From: Magallana gigas
Taxonomy: Eukaryota
NCBI RefSeq assembly: GCF_963853765.1
Contig: NC_088855.1
Coordinates: 3,038,001 to 3,102,000 of the forward strand
DNA: 64,000 nucleotides
Direction: 5' to 3'
Part shown: piece after piece, positions 35,128-52,800 of the stretch
Layout of the letters: each line of letters begins with the position of its first letter
How positions within the stretch are numbered: the first letter of the stretch is position 1
Notes under the pieces: generated by a model
Seen by the model: only the letters and a program-made list of their open reading frames with translations
Databases searched by the model: none
What the model was told of the DNA's origin: nothing
Program-made: the position numbers and the translations under genes

Positions 35128-38100
35128 CGAGTGATATTGAAAACTTTGTTTTCTCAAATAGATTTACTATGTATATATGCACATTTTTGGCACTAGTCTA
35201 TGATGACAATAAACTGTGTTATGTCAACTTGAAGTTTATTTATTTCATGGAATTAGGCAACAAAATCATTTTCAAACAATAAAACAATTCTTTATATAAA
35301 ATATAAAACTCACATCAAGCATAATGATTAAATTATGATTAAAATGTAATAATTCCCCGCATAGCCAGGGCAGCATTAAATTGTGTGTTTAACCAAATCT
35401 AAGGCTTAAACAAATGTAGTGACAGAGATGGCCTCCAATACAAATTCTTCAAGGATTACATGAGATTGACTATCGATCATATATATAACCGAAAAAGTAA
35501 TATTTGTTCAGAGCTAAGTGTATATTTTGAGGATCTGACTTGCATGCTTGTTCATCTTATAGTACATGCCCTATATATTATGAAGCGAGATTGTAATATT
35601 TTGAGGTATTTTATGAAATCAAAAAATAAATAGTTGATATCAATAATTCGAATTGTTGATATCAAAAATAATTCTTGATATCAAGAAATCTACTTTGTGA
35701 AATCAGAAAATCATTTCTTGATATCATAAATTCGAATTCGTGATATTAAGAAATGATTTTCCGATATCACAAAAAAGATTTTTTGATATCAAGAATTAAA
35801 GTTGATTTTTTATATAAAAAATGAATTCTTGATATCAGAAAATCATTTTTTGATATAAAAAAAAAACATTTGTATTTTCTGATATCAAAAATATAACTCT
35901 TGATATCAGAAAATGGTTTTCTGATATCAGAAAATGGTTTTCTGGTCAGAAAATGTGTTATTTTTATATCACGAAATCGATTTTTTAAATATTAAAATGG
36001 ATTGTATTTTCTGATATCAAGAATTATATTTTCTGATATCAGAAAATACCTCAACAATATTAAAACGGCGCCCCATAATGTAGCAGCCATCGTATACTGT
36101 AGATAAAAAACCGCACTTTATATATTGGCCACCTTCCACTCACGACCTGAGGTCCAAGGTTTGATTGCCACCGATATTCATAACCGGGTCATCTCGTAAA
36201 CAATCACCCACCATGCCTGGCCCCTACCCTGGACACTCTGACGAAGCTTTCCCGGGGGTTTTCAACCTGTCGGCCATGCCCCCTCAGCCCAAGGAGAAAA
36301 AACCAGGTCAGCTTCCAGAGGAGGACATCCGCCGCTTTTTTGAAGAGGTAAGAAACGCTATCGATGTTATCAATATACGACCAGTAAAATGGTACATGTA
36401 TGTCTTTAAATACAAGACTTTATCGTATCTTGATTTTCATCACCGTTTCACAGAATTATATAATATTTTTTATGATTCGTGTTGTTTTATCTCTTCACAT
36501 GCATAGAAAATATCGTTGATTTACCGTGCATATTTTCACCATAATAGCTGTATACAAATACGCTTTAATAAGGACCAGGTTCATTTTATTTTACACACAC
36601 AAACAAGTGCCAGTGATAGGGAGACCTTCAAAAGGTAACAGGTTGTTTCGCCCCAGTAGAGATTTGCACTCTGATTAAATATGGGATTATTATACGGCTT
36701 CAGTTTTCTCGAACTGTAAGCTATTGAAAGTGTTTTATTTTGAGTTGTTGTGGTTGTTTTCTAAAACGTCTGTTTAATTAACTGTATTAATTCTTTTATA
36801 AAACAGATTGATATTGCATATGGGACCTTGTTTGTCGAAAGTTCATAAGTACTAGGAAAAAGGGTTTGCACGGAATTGAATTAAAACAAAATTGTTCCCA
36901 TAAAGTTGAAAAAGGGTCTTTTATGCACGTGTTTTCAACTTTATGGGAACATTTTTGTTTTGATTCAGCAAAACGAATTCGAAGTTTATTCATTATTTAT
37001 AAACATAATAAAATATATTTGAATAGCATACTTCTAGAAAGCAAGCATATTCGAGTATTGCTTTTTTATTCGAAAAAAGTCGAGTAATAGACAACATTTG
37101 TTGACACACTTTATCAATATCAATTGAATTTAATTCCCATATGTTTCTTTAGGGATATGTCGTTGTGAAGGATTTCTTCTCCCCCAGTGAGCTGGAACCC
37201 TGTAAGAAAGCTTTAGAAAAACTTGTCGATGATGTAGCTCAGCGTCTCTACAAAGCCGGTGTAATGAAGAATAATGACCCCCGTAGAATAATGACCGGGG
37301 GTCATTTTTCTACGTAGAATAATGACCCCCCTAGCTGAAGAATAACTGGATTTTTCTGAAGAAAAAAGACCCAGGGGTTATTTTTCTTCATGTTAAACAT
37401 GAAGAAAAATGACCCCCATAAAAAAATGACCCCCTCACCTGTAAACATGAATAGAAATTGGTTACCCCGTATCCAAGATATGACTTTGAAATTGCTTAAT
37501 TTTCACTCTGTTTAACTTATCTTAAAGTTATAAACACCGAACTTGTAAATAAATCGCTGTATATATAGTTTTTCATATCCGTAGCAAGCACACGCAAAAC
37601 ACTCTGACATTGCCACAAATTGATTGTTAACAGTTACGTTACTTCTCTCGTCGACATACGGCGGAAAATGACGCAAATAAAGAAAAATTCATATTCAATG
37701 AGGATATTGTGTGATAATAAACGAACAATAATCATGAAAGAATAATTGTTCTAATGATATAATATTCATTGATGAATGAATTGTCAATCGAAGAATGATA
37801 CATGTATATATCTTTATGGAAAAAGACTAAGGGGGCAGGTAACGCAGGAATATGAATACTTCTTATTTACATTTCTTGGGGAAAGTGATTTTTAACAAAA
37901 GTCATTCTGCGTTAGTTTTGTTTTCTTCTACGTAATACAAGAACATCAATATTCTAAACATTTGTTGTAATGTTGTTTTGTGATCATGAATAGACTTTAT
38001 TCTTTTAGAGCAAATTTGTGAAGAGTACATGACTATAGTAAATCTTAATAGATAATAAACACTGATCGATTATGATAAGAAAAGATTTTTTGACAACCAC

Positions 38101-41429: not shown

Positions 41430-41779
41430 TTAACGTTAAATGAGACATTAATTTAAATTTGGAGACTTCACACTGAAAATGACATTCTTTGATCGGAGCT
41501 AGTGATCAAAGGAAAAAAAAATTATCAGTCAAATAATCTCTTCATCATTCGAGCTTAACGTTAAATGAGACATGAATAACATTCGGAGACACTTACACTT
41601 TTCAGATCACCAAATACACAACACTGTGGGATTGATACGAGGGTTGCTCCAAAAGTAGTGTCACAGTTGCAATAAAATCATGAAAACTCGCTGTAATGAC
41701 AAAATTTCGAAGTGTATTATATTTACATATATTTCTTTAGATCTGAAAATTTTAGTGCAAAACGATATTTGTTTCCGAA

Positions 41780-43056
41780 GACAACGTATATAGAGCGTTA
41801 AGTAAGGACAGTCCCCGCACGCCTGCGACGTTGTTTATGTATTTTTATCTGTAAAATCCAGTCGTCCCGGGTACCAAACACAATTCTATGTTCTATTATT
41901 GTAATTTTCAATAGAATTTTCCAGATTGTTTTCAAAATATTACACAGTGTTGAAATGGCAAATACTTGAAAAGTGCATTTCTTCTGTTGAGATATTTCAG
42001 ATCTTATTGAGATGTTAATTTTCTGAGTTTGTCCGCGCGAGATCTCAATAAAGTCTAGTGACTGAACAACCAATCATTGCTATAAAAATAGACCTTAACA
42101 TGTAAATGTGCAGAATAGATACATTGTATCAGTTATTAGTCCATCACTTCAGTTGTCGCCGAAGGTGACATCAAAAATCGGCTTTTTTAATGAAAAATTC
42201 TATCTATTTTAGATCCTTTCTAATGAAATATACGTTATCCTCATTTGAGATATTTCAGATATCTATTTGATATATTTCTTTTCTGATTTTGTACGCGCGA
42301 TATATCAAAAACAGTAAGTGATTGAGCAACCAATTTTTGCTTTAAGATAGACCTTTTTATGAATATGTGCAGAATACGCATCAATAACTTGTCTGTCAGT
42401 TCTGGTCGTAACCAGAAGCAAGCAAAATTGTACTTTTTGCTTTTATAATTTTCGAAAGAATTTTCCAGACTTTTTTTTTCAGCGCATTAGTGTAAATGGT
42501 AAATACATGAGTATTGCTTTTTTCTACTGAGGTATCTCAGATATTTTAAGAATTTTTTCTGATTTTGACTGTGCAAGACTCAATAACGGAAACTGATTGA
42601 GTAACCAAGATTTGCTATATGATAGACCTAAACATGTAGATGTGCAGCAAAGGTATCAATGATTTATCCGGCATGTCCAGTCGTCACCGGAACCAAACAA
42701 AATTGTATTTTTTAAAACTTTCTAATTAATGATAGTATATATTTTAATTTTTTTTTCAAAAATTCTACCCAGGATTAAAATCTCATGGTAAATCATCGAG
42801 ATGATTATTGCGTTTCTTATGTTGAGATATCTCGGATATATCGTTGAAATGTCTCTTTTTTTGTTATTTTCATGTTTTATTTGAAATGTCAGAGTATCAA
42901 GAGAGGAACACGTTTTTTTCTTTTTTTATTATGGTTTTCCGCTTTGCAATTGCAAATGCAACGAAGTGTTTAATGACAACTTTTGTAGTTTAGAGTTTAG
43001 GGTTTTAAAATTCGTCTGGAAGACCTATTCGTTGCTCGCAACGAGATTGCATCTAG
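41780..43056 (+). mobile_element. Helitron/Helentron-like non-autonomous element with ~270-bp internal repeats
   Basis: Three degenerate units (tgagatatttcagat...tagacct...atgtgcag) at about 41985, 42245 and 42525. The 3' end has a tcgttgc-tc-gcaacga hairpin (43029-43044) followed by CTAG|T (43053-43057). The left boundary is approximate. Confidence 0.55.
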
Positions 43057-44116
43057 TTATATTTACTTTTCAGTTATAGAAGTGGGGCCCATTGCATGTA
43101 CATGCATTGTATCCCCAAAAATACAGAAAAATTAGTGTTATTTAATTTTTTTTAAAAAGAAGTAGTAAAACATATTTGTAACTAAGTTTCATCCGACGTT
43201 TTTTTTTAAATTGTGACAAACCCCTGGAATTAATTTTCAAACGATTGTCCGTCTCCTTGAAATAATCTTAAAATAAGGTAAATTTGTGTGACGGTTTTGA
43301 TTTTCATCAAATGACCTTCTTATCTTTTTTATAATGGAGGGGCCGGCAAGAAATGCATGTTATGATATTTGTGAAAACAAAATTAATGATACACGTATAT
43401 GTGAGAGTAGAAGATTAGACAATTAGATAATTAAGGGGTCCTCTAAGGGGCACAGGTATAGAGTATACCTATGTTCACCTGAAAAGTACAAGAGTTGATT
43501 ATTCATTATTACTTTCGTCATATGTTGAATTCATCTTATTTAATTGTAAAAAGTTTAAAGGAATGAACACGATTTCTTAAACTAAGATGTCACTCTCCTT
43601 GTTAAGGTAGAATAACACACCTGGAAAAAGTCACTCGAATTAAAAGGAATTTTTTTGATAATGAAAGATACAATAATGTTTTTCAAAGTTTGAGGATTCA
43701 GTAATTCTTGATCATATATTCAATGTAAGAGAAATGGAAAAATATGTGAAACATGCGTATAAAATTATCAAAACAAAAATAAAGATTAAATTTAAAACAA
43801 ACGACAAGCAAAACAAATGGTTTGGCTCAAATCCTAATGTAAGAGATAGAAATGCATTGAATTCCCTTGAGAAGATATTTCTTTTAACAACAATAATTTA
43901 TAAGATCTATATATGGTTTTTTTTATCTATACTTGTATTTCTTAACTTCCCTCTCAATTTTCTTTGACAATATTAAAATGAAAACTAATGTTTAGGGGAT
44001 ATCTGAGTGATTCGAGATAGTTAGTACAATTTACATGTACAAATATTTAAAAAAAAATTAACTAGCTAGTATTTTTTTCTGTACATATGTCAAATTACGT
44101 ATGTTATTCTTTTTAA

Positions 44117-44360
44117 AGGGGCATGGTCACGATTTTGGTCAAAAATTAATTTTCCGTTTTTAATGTATACAATACTTCATTAAGGCAATTTTGATAGGCA
44201 GCCAAAATTCGAGTGCCATTCGTTAAGTTATCAGCGATTTACTGAGCTTACAATTCTTTGCTATGTAAACAAATATTTTGTTTACATTCTGAATGTCGAA
44301 GACCTAAAATGAATGTGTTAAATATTAGAAACTTGTTTTTGTTAAAATGAATATTAAGAA
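44117..44360 (+). mobile_element. Left end of another TTAA-flanked, Kolobok-type repeat (ttaa|aggggcatggtcacg)
   Basis: TTAA followed by purine-rich AGGGGCATGGTCACG. No matching right end was found, so it is truncated or interrupted; the end coordinate is approximate. Confidence 0.4.
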
Positions 44361-47300
44361 GATAGAATAAGCCATACTTATCCCGTAAAGTTGCATTTTA
44401 GTGCTGAAATTAATCAAATATGATACAATGTATATAATATGCTTGTATTTTATAATATTTTACTTTATCCCATGATATTGTATCATTTGATATGATACAA
44501 TGTTGTATCAAATTATATTCTATCTTAGAATACAATACCATGCTTTAATATTTACATTCACTTTCTTTCCCTCTATTAAATTGCATTTGTTGATTTGAGT
44601 GATATTTACGCACAAAACAGAAGACCCGATCACCAAATCTGGTGCGTATGAATACATTTAGTATTCCTTCAGTATTTCTCGAAGAACAAGAACTGAATCT
44701 TCTCGCGACTTCAAATAGGATAACTACCTGATATCATATTTACGCTGATAAATATTTCATTGATGTAAATATATTTTGACAGTTAAATGAATTCAATTGA
44801 TTAATTTCTTAGTTTACCAAGAGTAAATTCATTAAATTACAGAAAGAAAAATAAAATTGTGTTATTAGAATTTAAAACGCTGTGCACTATTTTTGTCAGC
44901 ATATTTCGGCTGTTCCAGTGGCCATTCCGTCAATTTCGCACTACTCGTTGAATAAGACAGAGCTTTTTAAAAAAAAATCATATTTGCGGGAAGGAAATAC
45001 ATGTTTAAAAAACGTAAATACAAGCATTGATTCATTATTTGAAACGATGAGTGCAAACAAAATTTCATAACGCGCTAGCGCGCGTTATACAATTTGTATG
45101 CACATACCGTTGCAGTTATGAGACCACATCTTTCAAAAAATAATGATTCAATGCTTGATATATCTCACAAATTGTTAAGGTATTTTATGGTATTATATGA
45201 TATATATTGTAAGTATGATAGGATGCAATTTTAATTTTGTATTATTGTATTGATTAACATATGAACATATGATTATCATACCATTTTTTAACAGATGATA
45301 TACGATATTGTGTCAAAACAGAATCCATGAATATCCATGATCATAAAGGATGGTTTTCATATAATATGATACAGGTGGTCTCATAAAAGTGATGCCTCAT
45401 AAAGGTGATGCCTCGTCTCGGTGAGCTTTGTAATATGTTATTACCTATGTTTTATAATTGCGGAGCTCTCCATCGTTTAAAGGGTTCCGAGGCATATTTT
45501 GGATTTTTTTTTTATAAAATTAATAAAATTAAATTATCAAGCAGGATAGGGTCCGGACTCCTATCCCGTTTTACTGCGTAAATTTATTAATATTGAATTT
45601 TCCGGGGGCGGATCCCCTCTCCCCCTCTAGATCCATGCATGAGCAAAAAGTGTCGCATAATGAAATTAGAATGTTACTGTGATTGGTCCACGGTAAACAG
45701 ACGGCTGGTAAGTGACAGGAGTCTAGAAGTGCAAATGTACACATTATGGCGGACATTAAATTGTGTGTGGAGTAGATAATGATTAGGCATAGCCAGCACT
45801 GGTAAACATATATGTTACATGTACACATTCAAATATTTATAAACATTCGTACCTGTATTAAATTCTATGTAATCGACCGAGACTGAATGCAATCAAAAAA
45901 TTAAAGGCGAAGGCGAAAGTGCGAAGATGCGAAGGCCAGAGTGCAAAGTTGGGAAGGAGCGATAGTAGAATCGCTCCTTCGCCTTCGAACCTTCGCACTT
46001 TAGGCATCACATCTTCGCGCTTCGTCGTCGCATCTTCGCACTTTTGCTCATTCGCCTTCGCACTATCGCCTTTGCAACTTAGGTCGAAGTGGCCCTATCG
46101 GAACACCATAGATATATGTAAATGTAATTGTTAAGATGACAACCATACCCCGATGCAATACGTCAATATCTTGTTATAACGGAAGGATTTTTATTTTCTA
46201 AGACATACCCCTTCTTTCACTTTAAGTTTATTTGAATATGAATTATAATTAAGGTTTTCCGCTGGGAGCGGAAAACCTTACTATTATTCGGAAAAATTTT
46301 CAAATTTCTTATTATTTTTTTTTTTCTTCTAGACGCCAACTTTGATCCTTAATATCTCGCTCGTTTGTTCACCGATTGTTTTGAAATTTTCAGGACTGAT
46401 AACATGCCGCGTGATGTTGTCGTTGCCTATTTTAGTTGAGAAAAATCCCTATCCGGTTTTGAGTTATTCCCCTTTTAGTAAAATTTAACGACTTCTTTTG
46501 TCCAGGGGGTTTAGCTTTAACGATGACTTGCAGAGTCTCAAAGATGGGCTGGTTTGGAAGCTAATACATTGAATTTGTGCGAGATATATTTTATTTATTA
46601 TTTAAATGCAAATAAAAGGGGTGGTATAGATGTTGAAACAAAGGTAAGAAAAAAAATCAAAAAAATTCGCGTATTTTCCGTGTTAGTTTTCTACCTGATA
46701 AAAATTTGTTATAACATGTATTTTAAAAGTTCTTGGTCTTACTCAGACCTTTCATTCGGTATGCCGAAAAAAGGGCTGGCCCTTATAATTAGGGAGTTAG
46801 AGGCGTCCAAAGTTTCTTGTCAATAACTTAAAAAGGAATAAAAATTTCTAATGCATTATTGAAGCAAAGTTGTAAAGAAATTAATTTTGAATCCTTCTAT
46901 AGTAGTCAATTTAATGTTTTCGTAATTTATAGTCAGTATTTGCAGAAACAATTGTTGTCAGTTCGGTCCATTTTTGTGGGGGTGCGCACGTTTATGAGGT
47001 TATGAAAGGGCTTCTTGTAATGCACTAACTGATACATGTAGTGCGCAAAAATAATTCCACATAAAATTCCCAAATGTTTCTATTCATATGTACATTTTCA
47101 TTTCATATAGATGAACCTCTTTGACCTTATTTTTGTTGTTTGTTTCATAACTGTGCCCCTGTCTATATTTAGATGCATTACGAGACTCAGGTAACCGATC
47201 GATAGGAGAGTCGCTAGCTGTATTCAGGCCGTCGCCTTGACGATAGTGCATGTGCTTGTAGAGCTGGACGTACACGTTTAACGCGTCGCCCCCTGTGTTA

Positions 47301-49651
47301 CTGTAGAAGAGACATTTTGAATTGTTTCAGTACTGGGAGATGTGTTAATAAAATGGTTCCAATGCATGGTAATTAAACTCAACTTTTCTACAATACGTAT
47401 ACACGGCCGTCTTATAAAGCACAATGTGTATTACTGACATGACAATTGTACGCTGGCAATTTAAACGAACGCGGGATTGCTCCCGATAGAACAATTCTTT
47501 TAAAGCAAAAAAAAAAAAATACTGATTTGCGATGGATATAATATAATTATCATCGTGGAGATGATTTTAAAAAGTGAACTTAATATTCGTATACGATAAT
47601 ATTTGAATCCAAAGCCGCTAGTTTTAAGTTACGGTTATCAGGGATATTAATTATGACTTGCCCCGCGTTTCAGGTTCTTTACTTGCAAAACATCTACAAA
47701 CGAAAATACCAAACAACCTTCAGCAGTAACTTATAAATTATTTATTCCATACACAATTCTAAAGAGGTAATTAATAAATTTTATAAATGCTTTATACGTG
47801 TATACATTCGCTATCTTCCATGGAAAAAAGAGGCATGGAAAAAATGTTGTTCAATGTTCATCAAATACGCTGTAGTCTTAGCAATCGAAAATAATTAACA
47901 AGCTGTATATTGATAGATTGACATATCAACAAACATTCAGACCCGCAATGTGTTTTTTTACAAGTTCTATAAAATGTAGAATCAATGACTGAATTCTTTA
48001 CCGTTTTCCGTGTTGGTTATTTTGAATCACGTGTGTACGTTATGTGTAGCCATAAAGATGAACACTTTAAGTGTTTAATTTTTATAAGAAATTGTGTACA
48101 TGCAGAGCAATGCAATGCTAGGACAATTAAATTCCAACAATGTATATGGTGAGGCCGGTCAGACTGATACTGGTTCTGCTTGTTCTACAAATAGCGAATG
48201 TAAGACGAAGTATTTGGGTGTTATATTTTAAACAAATATAAGTATTGCTTGCATTACTCAACAAAGTATTTTATTGGAATCATTCTTAGTTACCTTAACT
48301 GCATATGTACCGCTCGGTCTGTATCCCGGAAAAATTGACTACCATCCGAAATTTTTCATACAAGGTCTACAGACTTGCAGCTAACATTACCTTTAAAAAT
48401 ACATTTTAGAATTTGCCGCTGTTTATAAATTCATTAAAAAGACGCGCAGAATCAAGTAGTAATATGTCGTTTGATATGGGTTTCATGACGTCTATTTATA
48501 TTGTTTTCATTAAAATTATTTCATTATTTCAAGCTTGTGGGTGGAATGAAATCAGTTTCACATGTTATATGACATTAAAGATGTCCTCTCCCCACTTTTT
48601 CTCGCAGCAACTATTTTTTTAAAATTTACATAAAAAATTGAATTATCATGGAGTTGCCCCTCCCCCCTTTTTTGTAGCATGTAAAAAAAAATGGAATGAA
48701 AATCTTGATATTATGAGTGAAATTTTGAAAATTTTGGAAAATTCTTTTAAAAAATTTTTCATTTTTTTGCTTGTCAAGATTTGTTGGATGAGTTTGCCCC
48801 CCGCCCCCTACTTTCAAAAACGATGCTACGTGCACATAACCGATCCAGATAAATATAATTACATGTACATGTATCAAAAATAAACTTAAAAAACAAACTA
48901 CACATTCATCCTTCACCCACAATATTGCCTTTTCGATATTTGTCATCGTTGTAGACCCGTGTAACAATCTGTTACATTATATATGTAAGTAGGTGCTTGC
49001 ACGACAAAGAACCCCTTGCTGATCTACATTTTCATTAACGCATACAAAGAAAAAATATATTTTGATTTATTTTTGAATTTCTTTTGATGTAAAGAATTAG
49101 AGAAGAAATTGGTTCTCAGTCTCTCTTTATGCCTGTTTGTTAGCTGTTAATCCAAGTTCATTTTGAATATCCTTTTGTAATTTAAAAAATGCGATGTAAT
49201 TTTTTTTTCATGCAATATTTCGGATAAAGCAATGAAGAGTTGTTTCCTGAAATTTTATTAGACCATAAAATTGTAAAATGCTAACATTGAAAATTGTGCC
49301 CGATTTCTTTCTTTTTTTAAAGGTAAAACTTTATTGATTTAAAAAATGATTCTTTGAGACAAACAAATTGACATAATCAACAAGAGTTTGACAATCTCTA
49401 ACTGCAGGTCTGTAGCTTTTAGTCAGGAAAAGAATCGGATGGACGACCTAAGACACAGATCGTCCATCCGAATTTCTTGAAAATTTGCTCTTAATTTCGT
49501 ACGCGGACGCAATACTCACCGAGACTAAATGGTTCGTATCTTAAGTTTTAACTGCTTTGAAAGGTTATATTGGTTCTCTGATAATTTTGAACATGAATAT
49601 TTAAATAAAAATGGTTAAAATTATAGTAAAATTACCGGCATCGGTCTTCTC

Positions 49652-49827
49652 CGTGCGCGGATCTAGAAGGGGAAGGGTTCCAGACCCCCCCCCCCCCCAG
49701 CGAAATTTCTTTCAATTACGTGTACATTATAAACTTAACAAATATGCCTCGGACATCCCTTGGCAAACTCAAATAACCGTCTGACTTTCCAACCCCCACC
49801 CCGGAAAAATTTTCTGATCCGCGCATG
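49652..49827. mobile_element. Short MITE with (CA/CG)TGCGCGGATC termini, same family as 1-158
   Basis: cgtgcgcggatctagaagggg ... ggaaaaattttctgatccgcgcatg. Confidence 0.65.
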
Positions 49828-52800
49828 TTCCCACTCCTCAAAATACAAAATTATTCTTCAAAACCCCTTGTAAAATTTCCAGGATCTCCCTATATATACT
49901 AAGAGATTCATTGGCGCTTGCGTTCGATAAAAATGGGTGTAAAACGTTTGCCAATGGTCTTTTTACCTTCGTACCGGGCATAACCACAGTCCCACTCTGT
50001 GAATAAAATGCGGCGAATCAAACTAGAGACAACGTGTTAAGATCTATATTTGCTTATAAACATGTAGTATCATCGTGCAAAATGCACTGTTCAATTATAA
50101 AAAATTTTTTTGACTTTACTTGTAAAATTCGTAATTTTTTCTAACAGTTTATATCTTACAAAGTTACTTCTTTATTTAGTGATTGACACTTTTCAGACTT
50201 TATATGTGATTTCAAAGAGACAGAGTGTCATGTCTCAAGGACTGTTAATCTCTTAAAACAACATTGTGCAATTATCAGATTTTCATTTCTTGGACATCAA
50301 AGACTCACTGAGTTTATTTAATTTTTTATATCTGTAAACCTTCCACTCGGCTTACTTATATCATTACCTGTCAATTTATACTCACTGTTAAGATTCTTAT
50401 AAATAGTTATGTACAATTGGCAATGCGCAGTCTGGAATATGGCGGCCAGCCCCGGCCACGTCCGACTCTCTCAGAGTCTTGAGTCCGGAGACCACTACTG
50501 GCCATATCCGAATTGTTTGTAACATGTCTGTCTGTTAATTTGTTATAATGTTGCCATCGTTGAGTCTCGTCCAATAATGTGGAATCTTGCATCAATTGCC
50601 TGTTTATTTCTCTGGAACTGTATACTGGTGGACCTTCGGGAATACGGCAAACCTACCCTTCGTTTTAGCTTACGGCCCACAGCGCGCCACAACCTTATAC
50701 CTAATACACTTTACGCCAACATTCCCTCACCCGGTTCGTACTGCACACGACCGATGCAGATCCAGACGAATTCTCTATCACCGTAAAATCTACGCGGTCA
50801 CAGATATATAATACTTTGTTTCTCAGTGTTTACACATCTAATATTGTACTATGGTCAGCTATCAATTTTTTGTAATACGTCACAAGTATGACGCAGCTAC
50901 GACGGAAAACCTAATCGTTGCTTGCAACGAGCTCGTCTCTAGTTTCTGTTACTTTCTGTAAACTGCAGCAGTAAAAATAACAATAGTGTAAAGACTATTT
51001 CACAAATAATAAAAAAATATACTGAACAACTTTAATCTACAAGGGGGTCATTATTCTACAGGGGTCACTTTTCTTCATGTGGAGTGTGTTCATTTTTATG
51101 AAAATGACACTTATTCTTCAGGCAAAGGGGTCATTTTTCTACGTAAAATAATGACCGGGGGGTCATTTTTCTGCGTAGAATAATGACCGGGGGGTCATAA
51201 TTCTACGTAGAAAAATGACCCCCGGTCATTATTCTACGGGGGTCATTATTCTTCATTACACCGGCAAAATATCCAGTAAGTATCCGCAAATCTACAATAG
51301 TAAGCCTTAATATCCCGTAAGAATCCGACAAAATATTGTAAGCATCCGTTGATATCCAGTTTGTATCCGTAAATGTATTGTAAGCAGATGCTTGTAATTA
51401 TCTAGTCAATGCATTTATACACGAACGAATTGTAAGCGTCCGTAAAGGTTATCAAGTAAGTATCCACTAATGTATTGCTATCCGCAAATATCCAGTAGGT
51501 ACAAATATAATCATCCGTCAATATCCAGAATTTAGCCACAAATGAATTGTATCCATCCGTAAATATCCAGAAATTATCTGCAGATGTGTTGTAAATATCA
51601 AAAGATGTTCTGTAAAATCCACATTTTTTATAGAAATCTTAAGGTGACTGTTAAAATATATTTTGTATCCGAAATTATCCAAGAGTTACCAAAATATCTG
51701 TAAGAAGCTTAAAATACATAGTTTCATTAAATTTGCAGTAATTGTGCATGCACAATTGTATAAGTGACAAATCATAGGTATTCCTGAATTATCTGGAGTT
51801 AAAGTCAACTTACATGTATACCCATCGATTATCCATAGATATCCGGATAGTATCCGCAAGATTGTTATCGGGTATTCGCAAATATTAAGAAATAACCAAA
51901 ATGGATTTACACATCAAGTCTCCGCGAAAACCAATCGAGCATTTACACCTAGCAAAACAGTTGGAGATGTTTATGGATAAACTATCTGTTTTAATTATCA
52001 AGGTTTGTACGAAGACTGCGATCCTTTCCACGAACGACTGCAGAAAATTGACAAAGAGTGGCCAGGAGCAGCCATCTTGGTGATAAAAAACCAAGTACTT
52101 CCCCAGGTAATTCAGATCTCTTGCTGCCTCTAAAGCAATGTATAAAGTATTAATGAAACGAATTTCCACTGTTGATGAAATTTCAAATGGCACATGTACA
52201 ATTTAAATGTAGCAGCGCCATCCTATACCACCTTGGTAAAACAGCAAATCGTAGAAGTTATCATTAGAGATGAAAATCCACATTTAGAATAAAAACAAAA
52301 TAGTAAATGAGAGGCGTGTTAAATCTGAATCAATCACGAAAACTGTAAAGTTTTTACCCGTAAATGCTTATTTGGATCACAGTAATTATGTTTCTAACGA
52401 TGAACTGTGCACATCTCAAATTGTTCTATTATATACACTGGCCTGTCTATTATATATGCTGCTCTATATATTATATATACTGGTCTATTCATTATATCTA
52501 CTGGTCTATTCATTATTAAACTAAAAGGTCTGAGCAGCATTAGTGTGCTTGATTTGTATTGCCACAAACCATCACTAGGTTGATTAATAGAAACAATACA
52601 GGTTATCTCCATGGAAACCATGCGAACTCCTTAATACAATCTGTTAAGACAAATTTACGTGGAAAGTTGTATTTTAAACAAAGAAAATCAGTCACTGTGA
52701 GGTAACAGCAATAATGTCAAGTTTTAATATGAACCTTAATCGGGCGGGAGCTCATATAAGACGCCTTCAAATTTGACTGCCTGGTTGAAGGATCAAAGAG

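What the first reader, a model, noticed from the sequence alone, without database searches (positions are those of the whole stretch)
37256..51264. Giant 14-kb Ginger1-like transposon with exact CCGG duplication, proven by empty paralogous sites in the same window
Seen: TGT...ACA ends, 60 bp of perfect TIR, subterminal arrays of agaataatgacc and atgacc-ggg-ggtcat palindromes, and a CCGG TSD. The pre-insertion allele is visible in dioxygenase copies 1 and 2. Established: Ginger1 elements (Gypsy-integrase-like transposase) have TGT-initiated TIRs and CCGG/CCGT-specific 4-bp TSDs. Inference: this is a non-autonomous derivative of unusual size. Near-identical TIRs enclosing older-looking degenerate nested repeats suggest the whole 14-kb mosaic moved as a unit, i.e. 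a cargo vehicle, rather than growing in place.
Basis: partly seen in the sequence, partly recalled or inferred. Interest (0 to 1): 0.8.

Follow-up and report, generated by a model that had tools for sequence, protein, structure and literature searches.

The report
Ginger1-type oyster transposon with nested inserts
A 14-kb non-coding cut-and-paste transposon of the Ginger1 type sits in an exon of one of three tandem oyster dioxygenase-like genes. About 5.4 kb of it is two other mobile elements that landed inside this one copy, so it is a well-documented but ordinary nested transposon, not a 14-kb cargo vehicle.

Summary
Window 37260-51260 is a 14,001-bp element with TGT...ACA ends, a 61-bp perfect TIR and a CCGG duplication. 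Both tandem paralogs carry the empty site with a single CCGG.

The family has about 600 TIR ends in this roughly 564-Mb oyster genome. Of 29 sampled ends, 21 are flanked by CCGG and 2 by CCGT/ACGG. That matches the published Ginger1 signature. No transposase is encoded here, and I could not find an autonomous partner.

The element is a member of an approximately 8.9-kb subfamily. At least 10 loci share its interior, and three copies are 99.1-99.6% identical but have different TSDs, so that mosaic did move as a unit.

The remaining 5.4 kb is two insertions seen only in this copy:
- a 765-bp MITE with a TTAA duplication;
- a 4.7-kb Helentron/HINE-like element at a T^T site, 97-100% identical at its ends to a family with more than 1000 ends.

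Neither junction occurs elsewhere in the assembly. Other family pairs of 10-18 kb exist.

The insertion splits coding exon 2 of paralog 3, which also carries a TGG-to-TAG stop. Contigs from public runs suggest the insertion is real and probably polymorphic.

Verdict: a new member of a known kind, of low to moderate interest.

The parts
37256..37259 (.). Left copy of the CCGG target-site duplication
   Evidence: The paralogous empty sites carry a single CCGG.
37260..37331 (+). Left terminal inverted repeat. The tip reads TGTAA; 61 nt are perfect and 72 nt have one mismatch.
37260..37430 (+). Left subterminal array of AATGACC/GGTCAT motifs. These are probably transposase-binding sites (inference).
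   Evidence: motif positions 15, 32, 41, 63, 150 and 167 in the element
38092..38808 (.). Insertion of about 715 bp at a T^T site. The 4.6-6 kb core copies lack it; the 8.9-kb subfamily copies share it. It is therefore an older nested piece that now travels with the element. Boundaries are approximate.
39431..44417 (.). Interior specific to the 8.9-kb subfamily (element 2172-7158). It replaces about 1-1.5 kb of the core form and is shared by at least 10 loci at 94-99% identity. No coding capacity was detected.
40665..41429 (.). Private nested 765-bp MITE with TIRs of about 149 nt at 80% complementarity. Its TTAA duplication lies at 40661-40664 and 41430-41433. All sister copies examined lack it.
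   Evidence: (I1)
46251..50942 (+). Private nested Helentron/HINE-like non-autonomous element of about 4.69 kb. The 5' end has AAGGTTTTCCGC followed by its complement. The 3' end has CGGAAAACCTA, then the palindrome TCGTTGC-TT-GCAACGA, and finishes in CTAG. It sits at a T^T site without a TSD. The 5' boundary is ambiguous by 2 T.
   Evidence: (read loose ends at 50943-50945)
48629..48976 (-). Open frame inside the Helentron-like element with a marginal MAPEG match (22.2 bits; cut-off 23.4). It may be a captured gene fragment.
50943..51260 (-). Right end of the Ginger1-type element. It includes the right TIR (51189-51260) and 3.5 copies of a 32-bp palindromic GGTCAT/ATGACC unit.
51261..51264 (.). 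Right copy of the CCGG target-site duplication
37153..37259 (+). 5' part of coding exon 2 of PhyH-like paralog 3 (GYVVVKDFF...RLYKAG). The remaining 11 nt are at 51265-51275, followed by a GTAAGT donor.
24455..24458 (.). Empty site (single CCGG) in paralog unit 1
30872..30875 (.). Empty site (single CCGG) in paralog unit 2
55018..55020 (+). TAG stop in the last exon of paralog 3, where paralogs 1 and 2 have TGG (Trp)

Best explanation
Window 37260-51260 is a non-autonomous DNA transposon of the Ginger1 type, nested with two other elements.

Mechanism (inferred). A Gypsy-integrase-like DDE transposase supplied in trans binds the ATGACC/GGTCAT repeats clustered under both TIRs. It cuts at the TGT...ACA tips and integrates with a 4-bp stagger at CCGG. 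Repair of that stagger gives the CCGG duplication.

What moved (shown). The unit that moved is an approximately 8.9-kb non-coding mosaic. That mosaic exists at 10 or more other loci, and it is 99.1-99.6% identical at three of them, each with its own 4-bp duplication.

What was added (shown). This copy additionally received a 765-bp TTAA-duplicating MITE and a 4.7-kb rolling-circle Helentron/HINE-like element at a T^T site. These bring it to 14,001 bp.

Timing (inferred). Both additions most likely arrived after the element had settled here, so the element grew in place. The order of events is not shown.

Effect on the host gene. The element landed in coding exon 2, 11 nt before the splice donor, of the third copy of a tandemly triplicated PhyH-like dioxygenase gene. 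That copy also has a premature stop and is probably a pseudogene.
For: Ends, TIR, TSD and empty sites.

Family and target preference:
- There are 304 + 300 TIR tips with 2 or fewer mismatches in the genome and none for the reversed control.
- The 4-mers flanking the 29 sampled ends are CCGG 21, CCGT/ACGG 2, CCTT 3 (one segmentally duplicated locus) and 3 singletons.
- 10 of 12 paired copies have matching 4-bp duplications: CCGG x6, ACGG, CCGT, CCAT and CGGG.
- The published Ginger1 features are a 4-bp TSD that is CCGG in 75% and CCGT/ACGG in 24% of cases, TGTNR tips, and TIRs of 40-270 bp (PMC2836005).

Anatomy against sister copies. The window copy is collinear with the 8,889-bp and 8,925-bp copies except for element 3406-4170 and 8992-13680. 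The junctions read at base level show TTAA duplication for the first piece. For the second they show a T^T site with subTIR, palindrome and CTAG.

Uniqueness of the composite. Only the window itself spans each nested junction. In one search every sister locus breaks exactly at the MITE, at query positions 1234/2000.

The nested Helentron-like element is young and a standard copy. Its ends are 97-100% identical to others, there are more than 1000 candidate ends, and paired ends lie 4.2-4.8 kb apart, with a few at about 6.4 kb. Its structure matches the oyster HINE description (PMC7492417).

No coding or RNA cargo was found.

Host gene. Exon frames are conserved between paralogs, and paralog 3 has TGG changed to TAG.

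Independent data. A contig from run X15 carries 19 nt of the TIR joined to the flank, on a haplotype 5 SNPs away from the assembly.
Against: - No transposase was linked to this family. Genome-wide hits to OTU, rve and Ulp1 domains do not fall inside any of the TIR pairs whose coordinates I could see. I could not fetch more genome DNA. The superfamily assignment therefore rests on ends and TSD only.
- The order of events, nested insertions versus arrival at this locus, is not determined. A cut-and-paste move leaves no donor copy, so the absence of a second composite copy does not prove growth in place.
- The nested MITE is only 95% identical to its best relatives, while the host element is about 99.5% identical to its sisters. 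This is expected if an old MITE copy excised and reinserted, but it was not tested.
- The genome search scores only its 40 best candidates.
- The left junction was not checked with reads. The X15 contig has fewer than the 31 nt on the element side that the tool asks for.
Confidence: 0.8

Rival explanations
1. The complete 14-kb composite, with the MITE and the Helentron-like element already inside, was excised elsewhere and integrated here as one unit. On this reading the family can carry at least 14 kb.
For: The family clearly tolerates large sizes. Copies of 8.9 kb with different TSDs are 99.1-99.6% identical to this one. An 11.9-kb copy has a matching CCAT duplication. Adjacent TIR pairs lie 10.5-18.4 kb apart. 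Cut-and-paste leaves no donor copy, so the uniqueness of the composite does not exclude this. With three events in unknown order, the chance that the move came last is about one in three a priori.
Against: No second copy carries either nested junction. The larger nested element belongs to a very young, abundant family whose ends are 99-100% identical to this copy, so it could have arrived at any recent time. Transposition efficiency is reported to fall with size above about 6 kb (review PMC6431247). Near-identical TIRs carry no timing information for a DNA transposon.
Confidence: 0.25
2. The family is mobilised by a transposase that is not Ginger1. It would be an undescribed or other superfamily that happens to share TGT tips and a CCGG 4-bp target.
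For: No integrase-like transposase was found in any of the 15 copies examined, and none was found linked to the TIRs.
Against: The combination of a 4-bp TSD, about 72% CCGG plus CCGT/ACGG, TGTNR tips and a TIR of about 70 bp is the published diagnostic of Ginger1. Sola2 targets are AT-rich AWWT with short TIRs (PMC3627910). GingerRoot has 6-bp TSDs, and Ginger2 targets AT-rich sites. Repbase classifies non-autonomous DNA transposons on exactly these features. Ginger1 repeats are already annotated in the Pacific oyster.
Confidence: 0.1
3. Assembly artefact: the 14-kb block was wrongly joined into paralog 3 of a tandem gene array.
For: The locus is a tandem triplication whose units 1 and 2 are 100% identical. 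It is also full of high-copy repeats. Both are classic sources of mis-joins. No listed read or contig spans the whole right junction region.
Against: Both junctions are base-perfect, with a 4-bp duplication of the family's preferred target. A random mis-join would not produce that. A contig from a public run carries the TIR tip joined to the paralog-3 flank.
Confidence: 0.03

Closest known systems
Ginger1 DNA transposons (Bao, Kapitonov and Jurka 2010; PMC2836005), including their non-autonomous derivatives
   Same: TGTNR/...ACA tips, a TIR within 40-270 bp, and a 4-bp TSD that is mostly CCGG with some CCGT/ACGG. The family is multi-copy and young, with sister copies up to 99.6% identical.
   Different: There is no transposase in this or any of the 15 copies examined, and no autonomous partner was identified. 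Copies are typically 3.6-5.5 kb, and a transposing subfamily is 8.9 kb. That exceeds the 2.6-7 kb reported for full-length Ginger1. This copy reaches 14 kb only through nested insertions.
Cg_HINE / Helentron non-autonomous elements of the Pacific oyster (PMC7492417)
   Same: This applies to the nested 4.7-kb piece. It inserts at TT without a TSD. It has a 5' subTIR followed by its complementary IR and a 3' subTIR followed by a palindrome. Copy number is very high.
   Different: It is much longer than the described HINE flanking modules, and TRF detected no central satellite-like array inside it. I did not compare its sequence with the published Cg_HINE consensus sequences.
Pack-MULE-like or other cargo-carrying non-autonomous DNA transposons, and 'giant' transposons (review PMC6431247)
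   Same: TIRs enclose several kb of unrelated sequence, and that sequence is propagated along with them (the 8.9-kb subfamily).
   Different: The cargo shows no gene, no gene fragment above threshold, no tRNA and no Rfam RNA. It is other repeats, not host genes. 14 kb is far below the giant classes.

Membership tests
Ginger1 | 4-bp target-site duplication | tested here: met
   CCGG flanks both ends, and the empty paralog sites have one CCGG. 10 of 12 other paired copies have matching 4-bp duplications.
Ginger1 | Target specificity: CCGG (about 75%) or CCGT/ACGG (about 24%) | tested here: met
   Of 29 sampled ends, 21 are CCGG and 2 are CCGT/ACGG. The rest are CCTT x3 (one duplicated locus), CCCT, CCAT and CGGG. 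The CCGT/ACGG share is lower here.
Ginger1 | 5'-TGTNR ... 3' complementary termini | tested here: met
   TGTAA...TTACA
Ginger1 | Terminal inverted repeats of about 40-270 bp | tested here: met
   61 nt are perfect, 72 nt have one mismatch, and the 77-nt arms include the palindromic TSD.
Ginger1 | Transposase like Gypsy integrase (YPYY, H2C2, DDE, GPY/F), usually with a C-terminal OTU or Ulp1 domain, encoded by the element or by an autonomous partner with the same ends | tested here: inconclusive
   Absent from this element and from 14 other copies. Genome hits to OTU, rve and Ulp1 do not fall within the TIR pairs visible. Only 100 of the 604 TIR coordinates were listed, and no further genome DNA could be fetched.
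Helentron / HINE (nested 46251-50942) | Insertion at TT or an oligo-T site without a target-site duplication | tested here: met
   The empty site in sister copies reads ...TATAATTTCTG.... The filled site has the element between T's with a 2-nt TT ambiguity. Read loose ends fall at 50943-50945.
Helentron / HINE (nested 46251-50942) | 5' subTIR plus a nearby complementary IR; 3' subTIR followed by a short palindrome | tested here: met
   Read directly. The 5' end is AAGGTTTTCCGC-TGGGA-GCGGAAAACCTT. The 3' end is CGGAAAACCTA, then TCGTTGC-TT-GCAACGA, ending in CTAG.
Helentron / HINE (nested 46251-50942) | Rep/helicase protein in autonomous relatives that share the ends | not tested
   The genome holds many open frames of about 2,700 aa with an OTU domain. 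They may be Helentron proteins, but I did not link them to this family.
TTAA-targeting MITE (piggyBac or Kolobok type; nested 40665-41429) | TTAA duplication with TIRs. The superfamily is decided by terminal nucleotides and the transposase. | tested here: inconclusive
   The TTAA duplication and the TIRs of about 149 nt are shown, and there are at least 640 candidates in the genome. The tips read AGC...GCT, not the CCC...GGG that I recall for piggyBac. The superfamily was left open.

The most novel reading that the evidence does not exclude
The full 14-kb composite, and more generally the 9-18 kb copies of this family, are still substrates for a Ginger1 transposase. On that reading an integrase-like cut-and-paste enzyme would routinely move non-coding loads two to three times larger than any described autonomous Ginger1. 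Nested Helentrons and MITEs would then be spread passively as passengers.
Probability: 0.2. Interest if true: 0.5.

Novelty: new member of a known kind. Interest (0 to 1): 0.3.

Why it matters
The locus is a clean, base-resolved example of Ginger1-type integration. It has an exact empty site in cis, in the paralogs, and a family-wide CCGG preference. Ginger1 biology in molluscs is little described.

It shows that a non-coding 8.9-kb derivative, larger than any published full-length Ginger1, has transposed several times recently. That is modestly informative about the size tolerance of integrase-like transposases.

It also documents a probable gene-inactivating and probably polymorphic insertion in one member of a tandem gene family, which could serve as a marker.

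It does not reveal a new kind of element. The headline claim of a 14-kb cargo vehicle is not supported.

Tried and rejected
**Search for a transposase**
- Inside the element: no ORF of 120 aa or more. The 53 open frames of 55 aa or more, scanned against Pfam, gave only a marginal MAPEG hit, which lies in the nested Helentron-like part.
- In 14 other copies: no ORF of 130 aa or more lies inside any element.
- Genome-wide by Pfam family: OTU, rve and Peptidase_C48/Ulp1. None of the hits lies within the TIR pairs visible. Most rve hits are LTR-retrotransposon Pol frames, and most OTU hits sit in frames of about 2,700 aa.

**Limits that blocked further work**
Later searches could return no loci either. 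The larger copies and any autonomous candidate therefore remain unread.
- I did not use the large protein searches, because no protein of this element is in question.
- I did not build or search a joined (spliced) model of the gene.

**Other negative or weak results**
- Rfam and tRNA scans of the element found nothing.
- A PDB sequence search with two host-gene exons gave no useful match. The 'dioxygenase' label therefore rests on a weak single-exon PhyH hit (E = 0.0044, 17.7 bits, below the cut-off) and on a WHQ|D motif split across two exons, which I read from the sequence.
- I considered Sola2 as the superfamily and rejected it. I also rejected GingerRoot and Ginger2. All three have different TSDs.
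- The earlier-findings search for Ginger in this genome returned nothing.

**Read data**
- The share of sampled words (0.70-0.78) could not be interpreted as presence or absence.
- The raw short reads at the junctions are swamped by hundreds of other copies and by the two paralogs.


Full report
**1. The observation**

The sequence at the given coordinates is as described. The element starts with TGTAATGAAG at 37260 and ends with CTTCATTACA at 51260, a length of 14,001 bp. CCGG lies on both sides, at 37256-37259 and 51261-51264.

The inverted arms are 77 nt and 99% complementary. That figure includes the palindromic TSD. Read from the tips, 61 nt are perfect and 72 nt have one mismatch. The 37-nt tip occurs exactly twice in the window, against none in 100 shuffles.

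The hexamer ATGACC or its complement occurs 16 times in the element. Fifteen of those lie in the terminal ~170 bp (left) or ~215 bp (right), and only one lies in the 13.1-kb interior. The right end holds 3.5 copies of a 32-bp palindromic unit.

The 32-nt flanks on each side recur without mismatch at 24427-24486 and 30844-30903. There they overlap by one CCGG. These sites lie in units 1 and 2 of a tandem triplication of about 6.4 kb. The pre-insertion state is therefore visible twice in the same window.

**2. The family in this genome**

The window is C3:3038001-3102000 of a 564-Mb assembly in 29 contigs. Run labels and earlier notes of this scan call it an oyster.

The 30-nt TIR tip, with 2 or fewer mismatches, occurs 304 times forward and 300 times reverse. 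The reversed control occurs 0 times. That suggests roughly 300 elements.

The 4-mers flanking the 29 sampled ends are CCGG in 21, CCGT/ACGG in 2, CCTT in 3 (one segmentally duplicated locus), and CCCT, CCAT and CGGG once each.

Twelve fetched copies have both TIRs. Ten of them have matching 4-bp duplications: CCGG six times, then ACGG, CCGT, CCAT and CGGG. Their lengths are 3.8-11.9 kb.

Adjacent +/- exact-tip pairs on contigs C1-C3 have a median spacing of about 5.2 kb. Pairs at 10.5, 10.5, 11.4 and 18.4 kb also exist (these were not TSD-checked). The window copy is therefore large for the family but not unique.

**3. Comparison with Ginger1**

Bao et al. (PMC2836005) define Ginger1 by several features:
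- TIRs of 40-270 bp;
- TGTNR tips;
- 4-bp TSDs that are CCGG in 75% and CCGT/ACGG in 24% of cases;
- full-length sizes of 2.6-7 kb;
- a Gypsy-integrase-like transposase with a C-terminal OTU or Ulp1 domain.

All of the structural criteria are met here.

Other candidates with integrase-like transposases or 4-bp TSDs do not fit:
- Ginger2 targets AT-rich RTATAY sites.
- GingerRoot has 6-bp TSDs.
- Sola2 has AT-rich AWWT targets and short TIRs.

Repbase classifies non-autonomous DNA transposons by exactly these end and TSD features. Ginger1-related repeats are already recorded in the Pacific oyster.

**4. No transposase**

The element has no ORF of 120 aa or more. Its 53 open frames of 55 aa or more give no transposase Pfam hit. 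Fourteen other copies have no ORF of 130 aa or more inside the element.

Genome-wide searches for OTU, rve and Ulp1 domains gave many hits. None lies inside the TIR pairs whose coordinates I could see.

I could not read the 7-18 kb copies or any candidate autonomous element. The protein criterion for membership is therefore open.

**5. Anatomy of the 14 kb**

I aligned the element against 15 other copies.

- *Core form.* The common 4.6-6 kb form shares element positions 1-832, 1535-2171, 7159-8991 and 13681-14001.
- *8.9-kb subfamily.* This subfamily additionally shares an insert of about 715 bp at a T^T site (element 833-1549) and a 5-kb replacement interior (2172-7158).
- *Closest copies.* Two complete subfamily copies, of 8,889 bp (TSD ACGG) and 8,925 bp (TSD CCGT), are collinear with the window copy. 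So is a third copy that is interrupted by a 12.7-kb insert. All three are 99.1-99.6% identical to the window copy at aligned bases. Two further copies are about 97.3-98% identical.
- *Spread.* A genome search with the 5-kb interior finds it at 10 or more loci at 94-99% identity, plus several at 90-92%.

This non-coding mosaic has therefore been copied or moved as one piece several times recently.

**6. The two private additions**

Relative to its sisters, the window copy has two extra blocks.

*(a) Window 40665-41429, 765 bp.* Sister copies read ...GAGCTTAACGTT... at this point. The window reads ...GAGCTTAA|AGCTATACACGC...GCGTGTATAGCT|TTAACGTT.... This is a TTAA duplication around an element with TIRs of about 149 nt (I1). 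It is a MITE with at least 640 candidate copies, the best of them 95% identical.

*(b) Window ~46251-50942, 4.69 kb.* Sister copies read ...ATTATAATTTCTGTTAC.... The insert sits between T's and has no duplication beyond a 2-nt TT ambiguity.
- It begins AAGGTTTTCCGC-TGGGA-GCGGAAAACCTT.
- It ends CGGAAAACCTA-A-TCGTTGC-TT-GCAACGA-GCTCGTCTCTAG.
- That is a 5' subTIR with its complementary IR, then a 3' subTIR, a palindrome and CTAG.
- This is the structure described for oyster HINE/Helentron non-autonomous elements, which insert at TT without a TSD (PMC7492417).
- Its ends are 97-100% identical to more than 1000 candidate ends, and paired ends elsewhere lie 4.2-4.8 kb apart, with a few at about 6.4 kb. 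It is a standard full-length copy of a very young family.

In all three junction searches, only the window itself spans the junction. In one search every sister locus breaks exactly at the MITE. Read loose ends confirm these element boundaries in other individuals (table 7).

**7. Moved as a unit, or grew in place**

This is met in spirit for the large insert, whose ends are as close to their relatives (99-100%) as the host element is to its sisters.

The MITE is only 95% identical to its relatives. For a cut-and-paste element this does not date the insertion, because an old copy can excise and reinsert with its accumulated mutations.

TIR identity does not date a DNA transposon's insertion either.

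What is shown: the composite is unique in this assembly, and the 8.9-kb form is the propagated unit.

What is not shown: the order of the three events. Cut-and-paste leaves no donor copy. I put growth in place at roughly 65-75% and movement of the 14-kb composite at roughly 25%.

**8. Host gene**

The insertion lies in an open frame, GYVVVKDFFSPSELEPCKKALEKLVDDVAQRLYKAG|KIS. The frame is preceded by an AG and followed, 11 nt after the TSD, by GTAAGT.

The 'dioxygenase' label has limited support. One downstream exon gives a weak PhyH hit (E = 0.0044, below the cut-off). The iron-binding WHQ|D motif is split across two exons, which I read directly. PDB searches with single exons found nothing. 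I did not build or search a joined exon model.

Paralog 3 also carries TGG changed to TAG at 55018-55020 in its last exon, together with a Trp-to-Leu change. It is probably a pseudogene.

**9. Independent data**

I laid two contig sets and two raw-read runs on 50400-52400.

- *X15.* It has a 568-bp contig covering 51242-51809. That is 19 nt of the TIR tip joined to the flank, with 5 differences from the assembly. The junction therefore exists on a second haplotype, although 19 nt is under the tool's 31-nt bridging rule.
- *X16.* It has a 1,605-bp contig whose match starts exactly at 51261. It has 11 differences and one gap over 1,140 bp. Paralog 1 differs at 32 sites plus a 12-bp gap. At least 142 further letters of this contig do not fit the element. 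This is what an empty allele of paralog 3 would look like, so the insertion is probably polymorphic. The unmatched letters were not shown, so this is not proven.
- *Raw short reads.* They are uninformative here because of hundreds of other copies and the two paralogs.
- The left junction was not tested.

**10. Cargo**

No tRNA and no Rfam family were found. There is no Pfam domain apart from a marginal MAPEG-like frame at 48629-48976 (-) inside the Helentron-like insert. It scores 22.2 bits against a cut-off of 23.4. The 'cargo' is other repeats.

**11. Verdict**

The Ginger1-type assignment is well supported on structural grounds, with the transposase untested. The '14-kb vehicle' inference is not supported; an 8.9-kb vehicle is.

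This is a new member of a known kind. Its only mildly unusual trait is the size of the transposing non-autonomous form.

Noticed in passing
window 22518-37259 and 51265-~57700: A PhyH-like gene unit of about 6.4 kb is tandemly triplicated. Units 1 and 2 are 99-100% identical over every stretch compared, and unit 3 is mostly 93-98% identical to them (two stretches drop to 69-76% in the ungapped comparison). Such near-identity suggests a very recent duplication, gene conversion or an assembly collapse/expansion.
   Followed up: partly
window 55018-55020: Paralog 3 has TAG where paralogs 1 and 2 have TGG (Trp) in the last exon, and a nearby Trp-to-Leu change. This is a second inactivating lesion besides the transposon.
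   Followed up: yes
window 48629-48976 (-): An open frame inside the nested Helentron-like element has a marginal MAPEG-family match (E = 1.6e-4, 22.2 bits, cut-off 23.4). It may be a host gene fragment captured by a rolling-circle element.
   Followed up: partly
G000 genome-wide: Dozens of uninterrupted open frames of about 2,600-2,900 aa contain an OTU domain, many with identical scores. They look like numerous intact autonomous Helentron-type proteins, which would mean an active family.
   Followed up: no
L040+L039 (G000:C4:42423853-42443852): A sister 8.9-kb copy, about 99% identical, is itself split by an insertion of about 12.7 kb between element positions 2375 and 2494. Large composites arise repeatedly in this family by nesting.
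   Followed up: partly
G000:C8:46965482-47000354 (L009-L011): Three copies of the element's left end have the identical flank (CCTT/AAGG) and lie about 16-18 kb apart. This is a segmental tandem duplication that contains the transposon, not three independent insertions.
   Followed up: no
window 28238-28612, 34653-35027, 55041-55440: A short 25-bp tandem array recurs at the 3' end of each gene unit. The array in unit 3 has one more repeat.
   Followed up: no
window 10227-11411, 12374-12788, 15951-17210: Minisatellite arrays with periods of 59, 53 and 48 bp lie upstream of the gene cluster. Another reader of this window has already flagged them.
   Followed up: no
window 60805-61214: A run of N, either an assembly gap or masked. 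I left it untouched.
   Followed up: no
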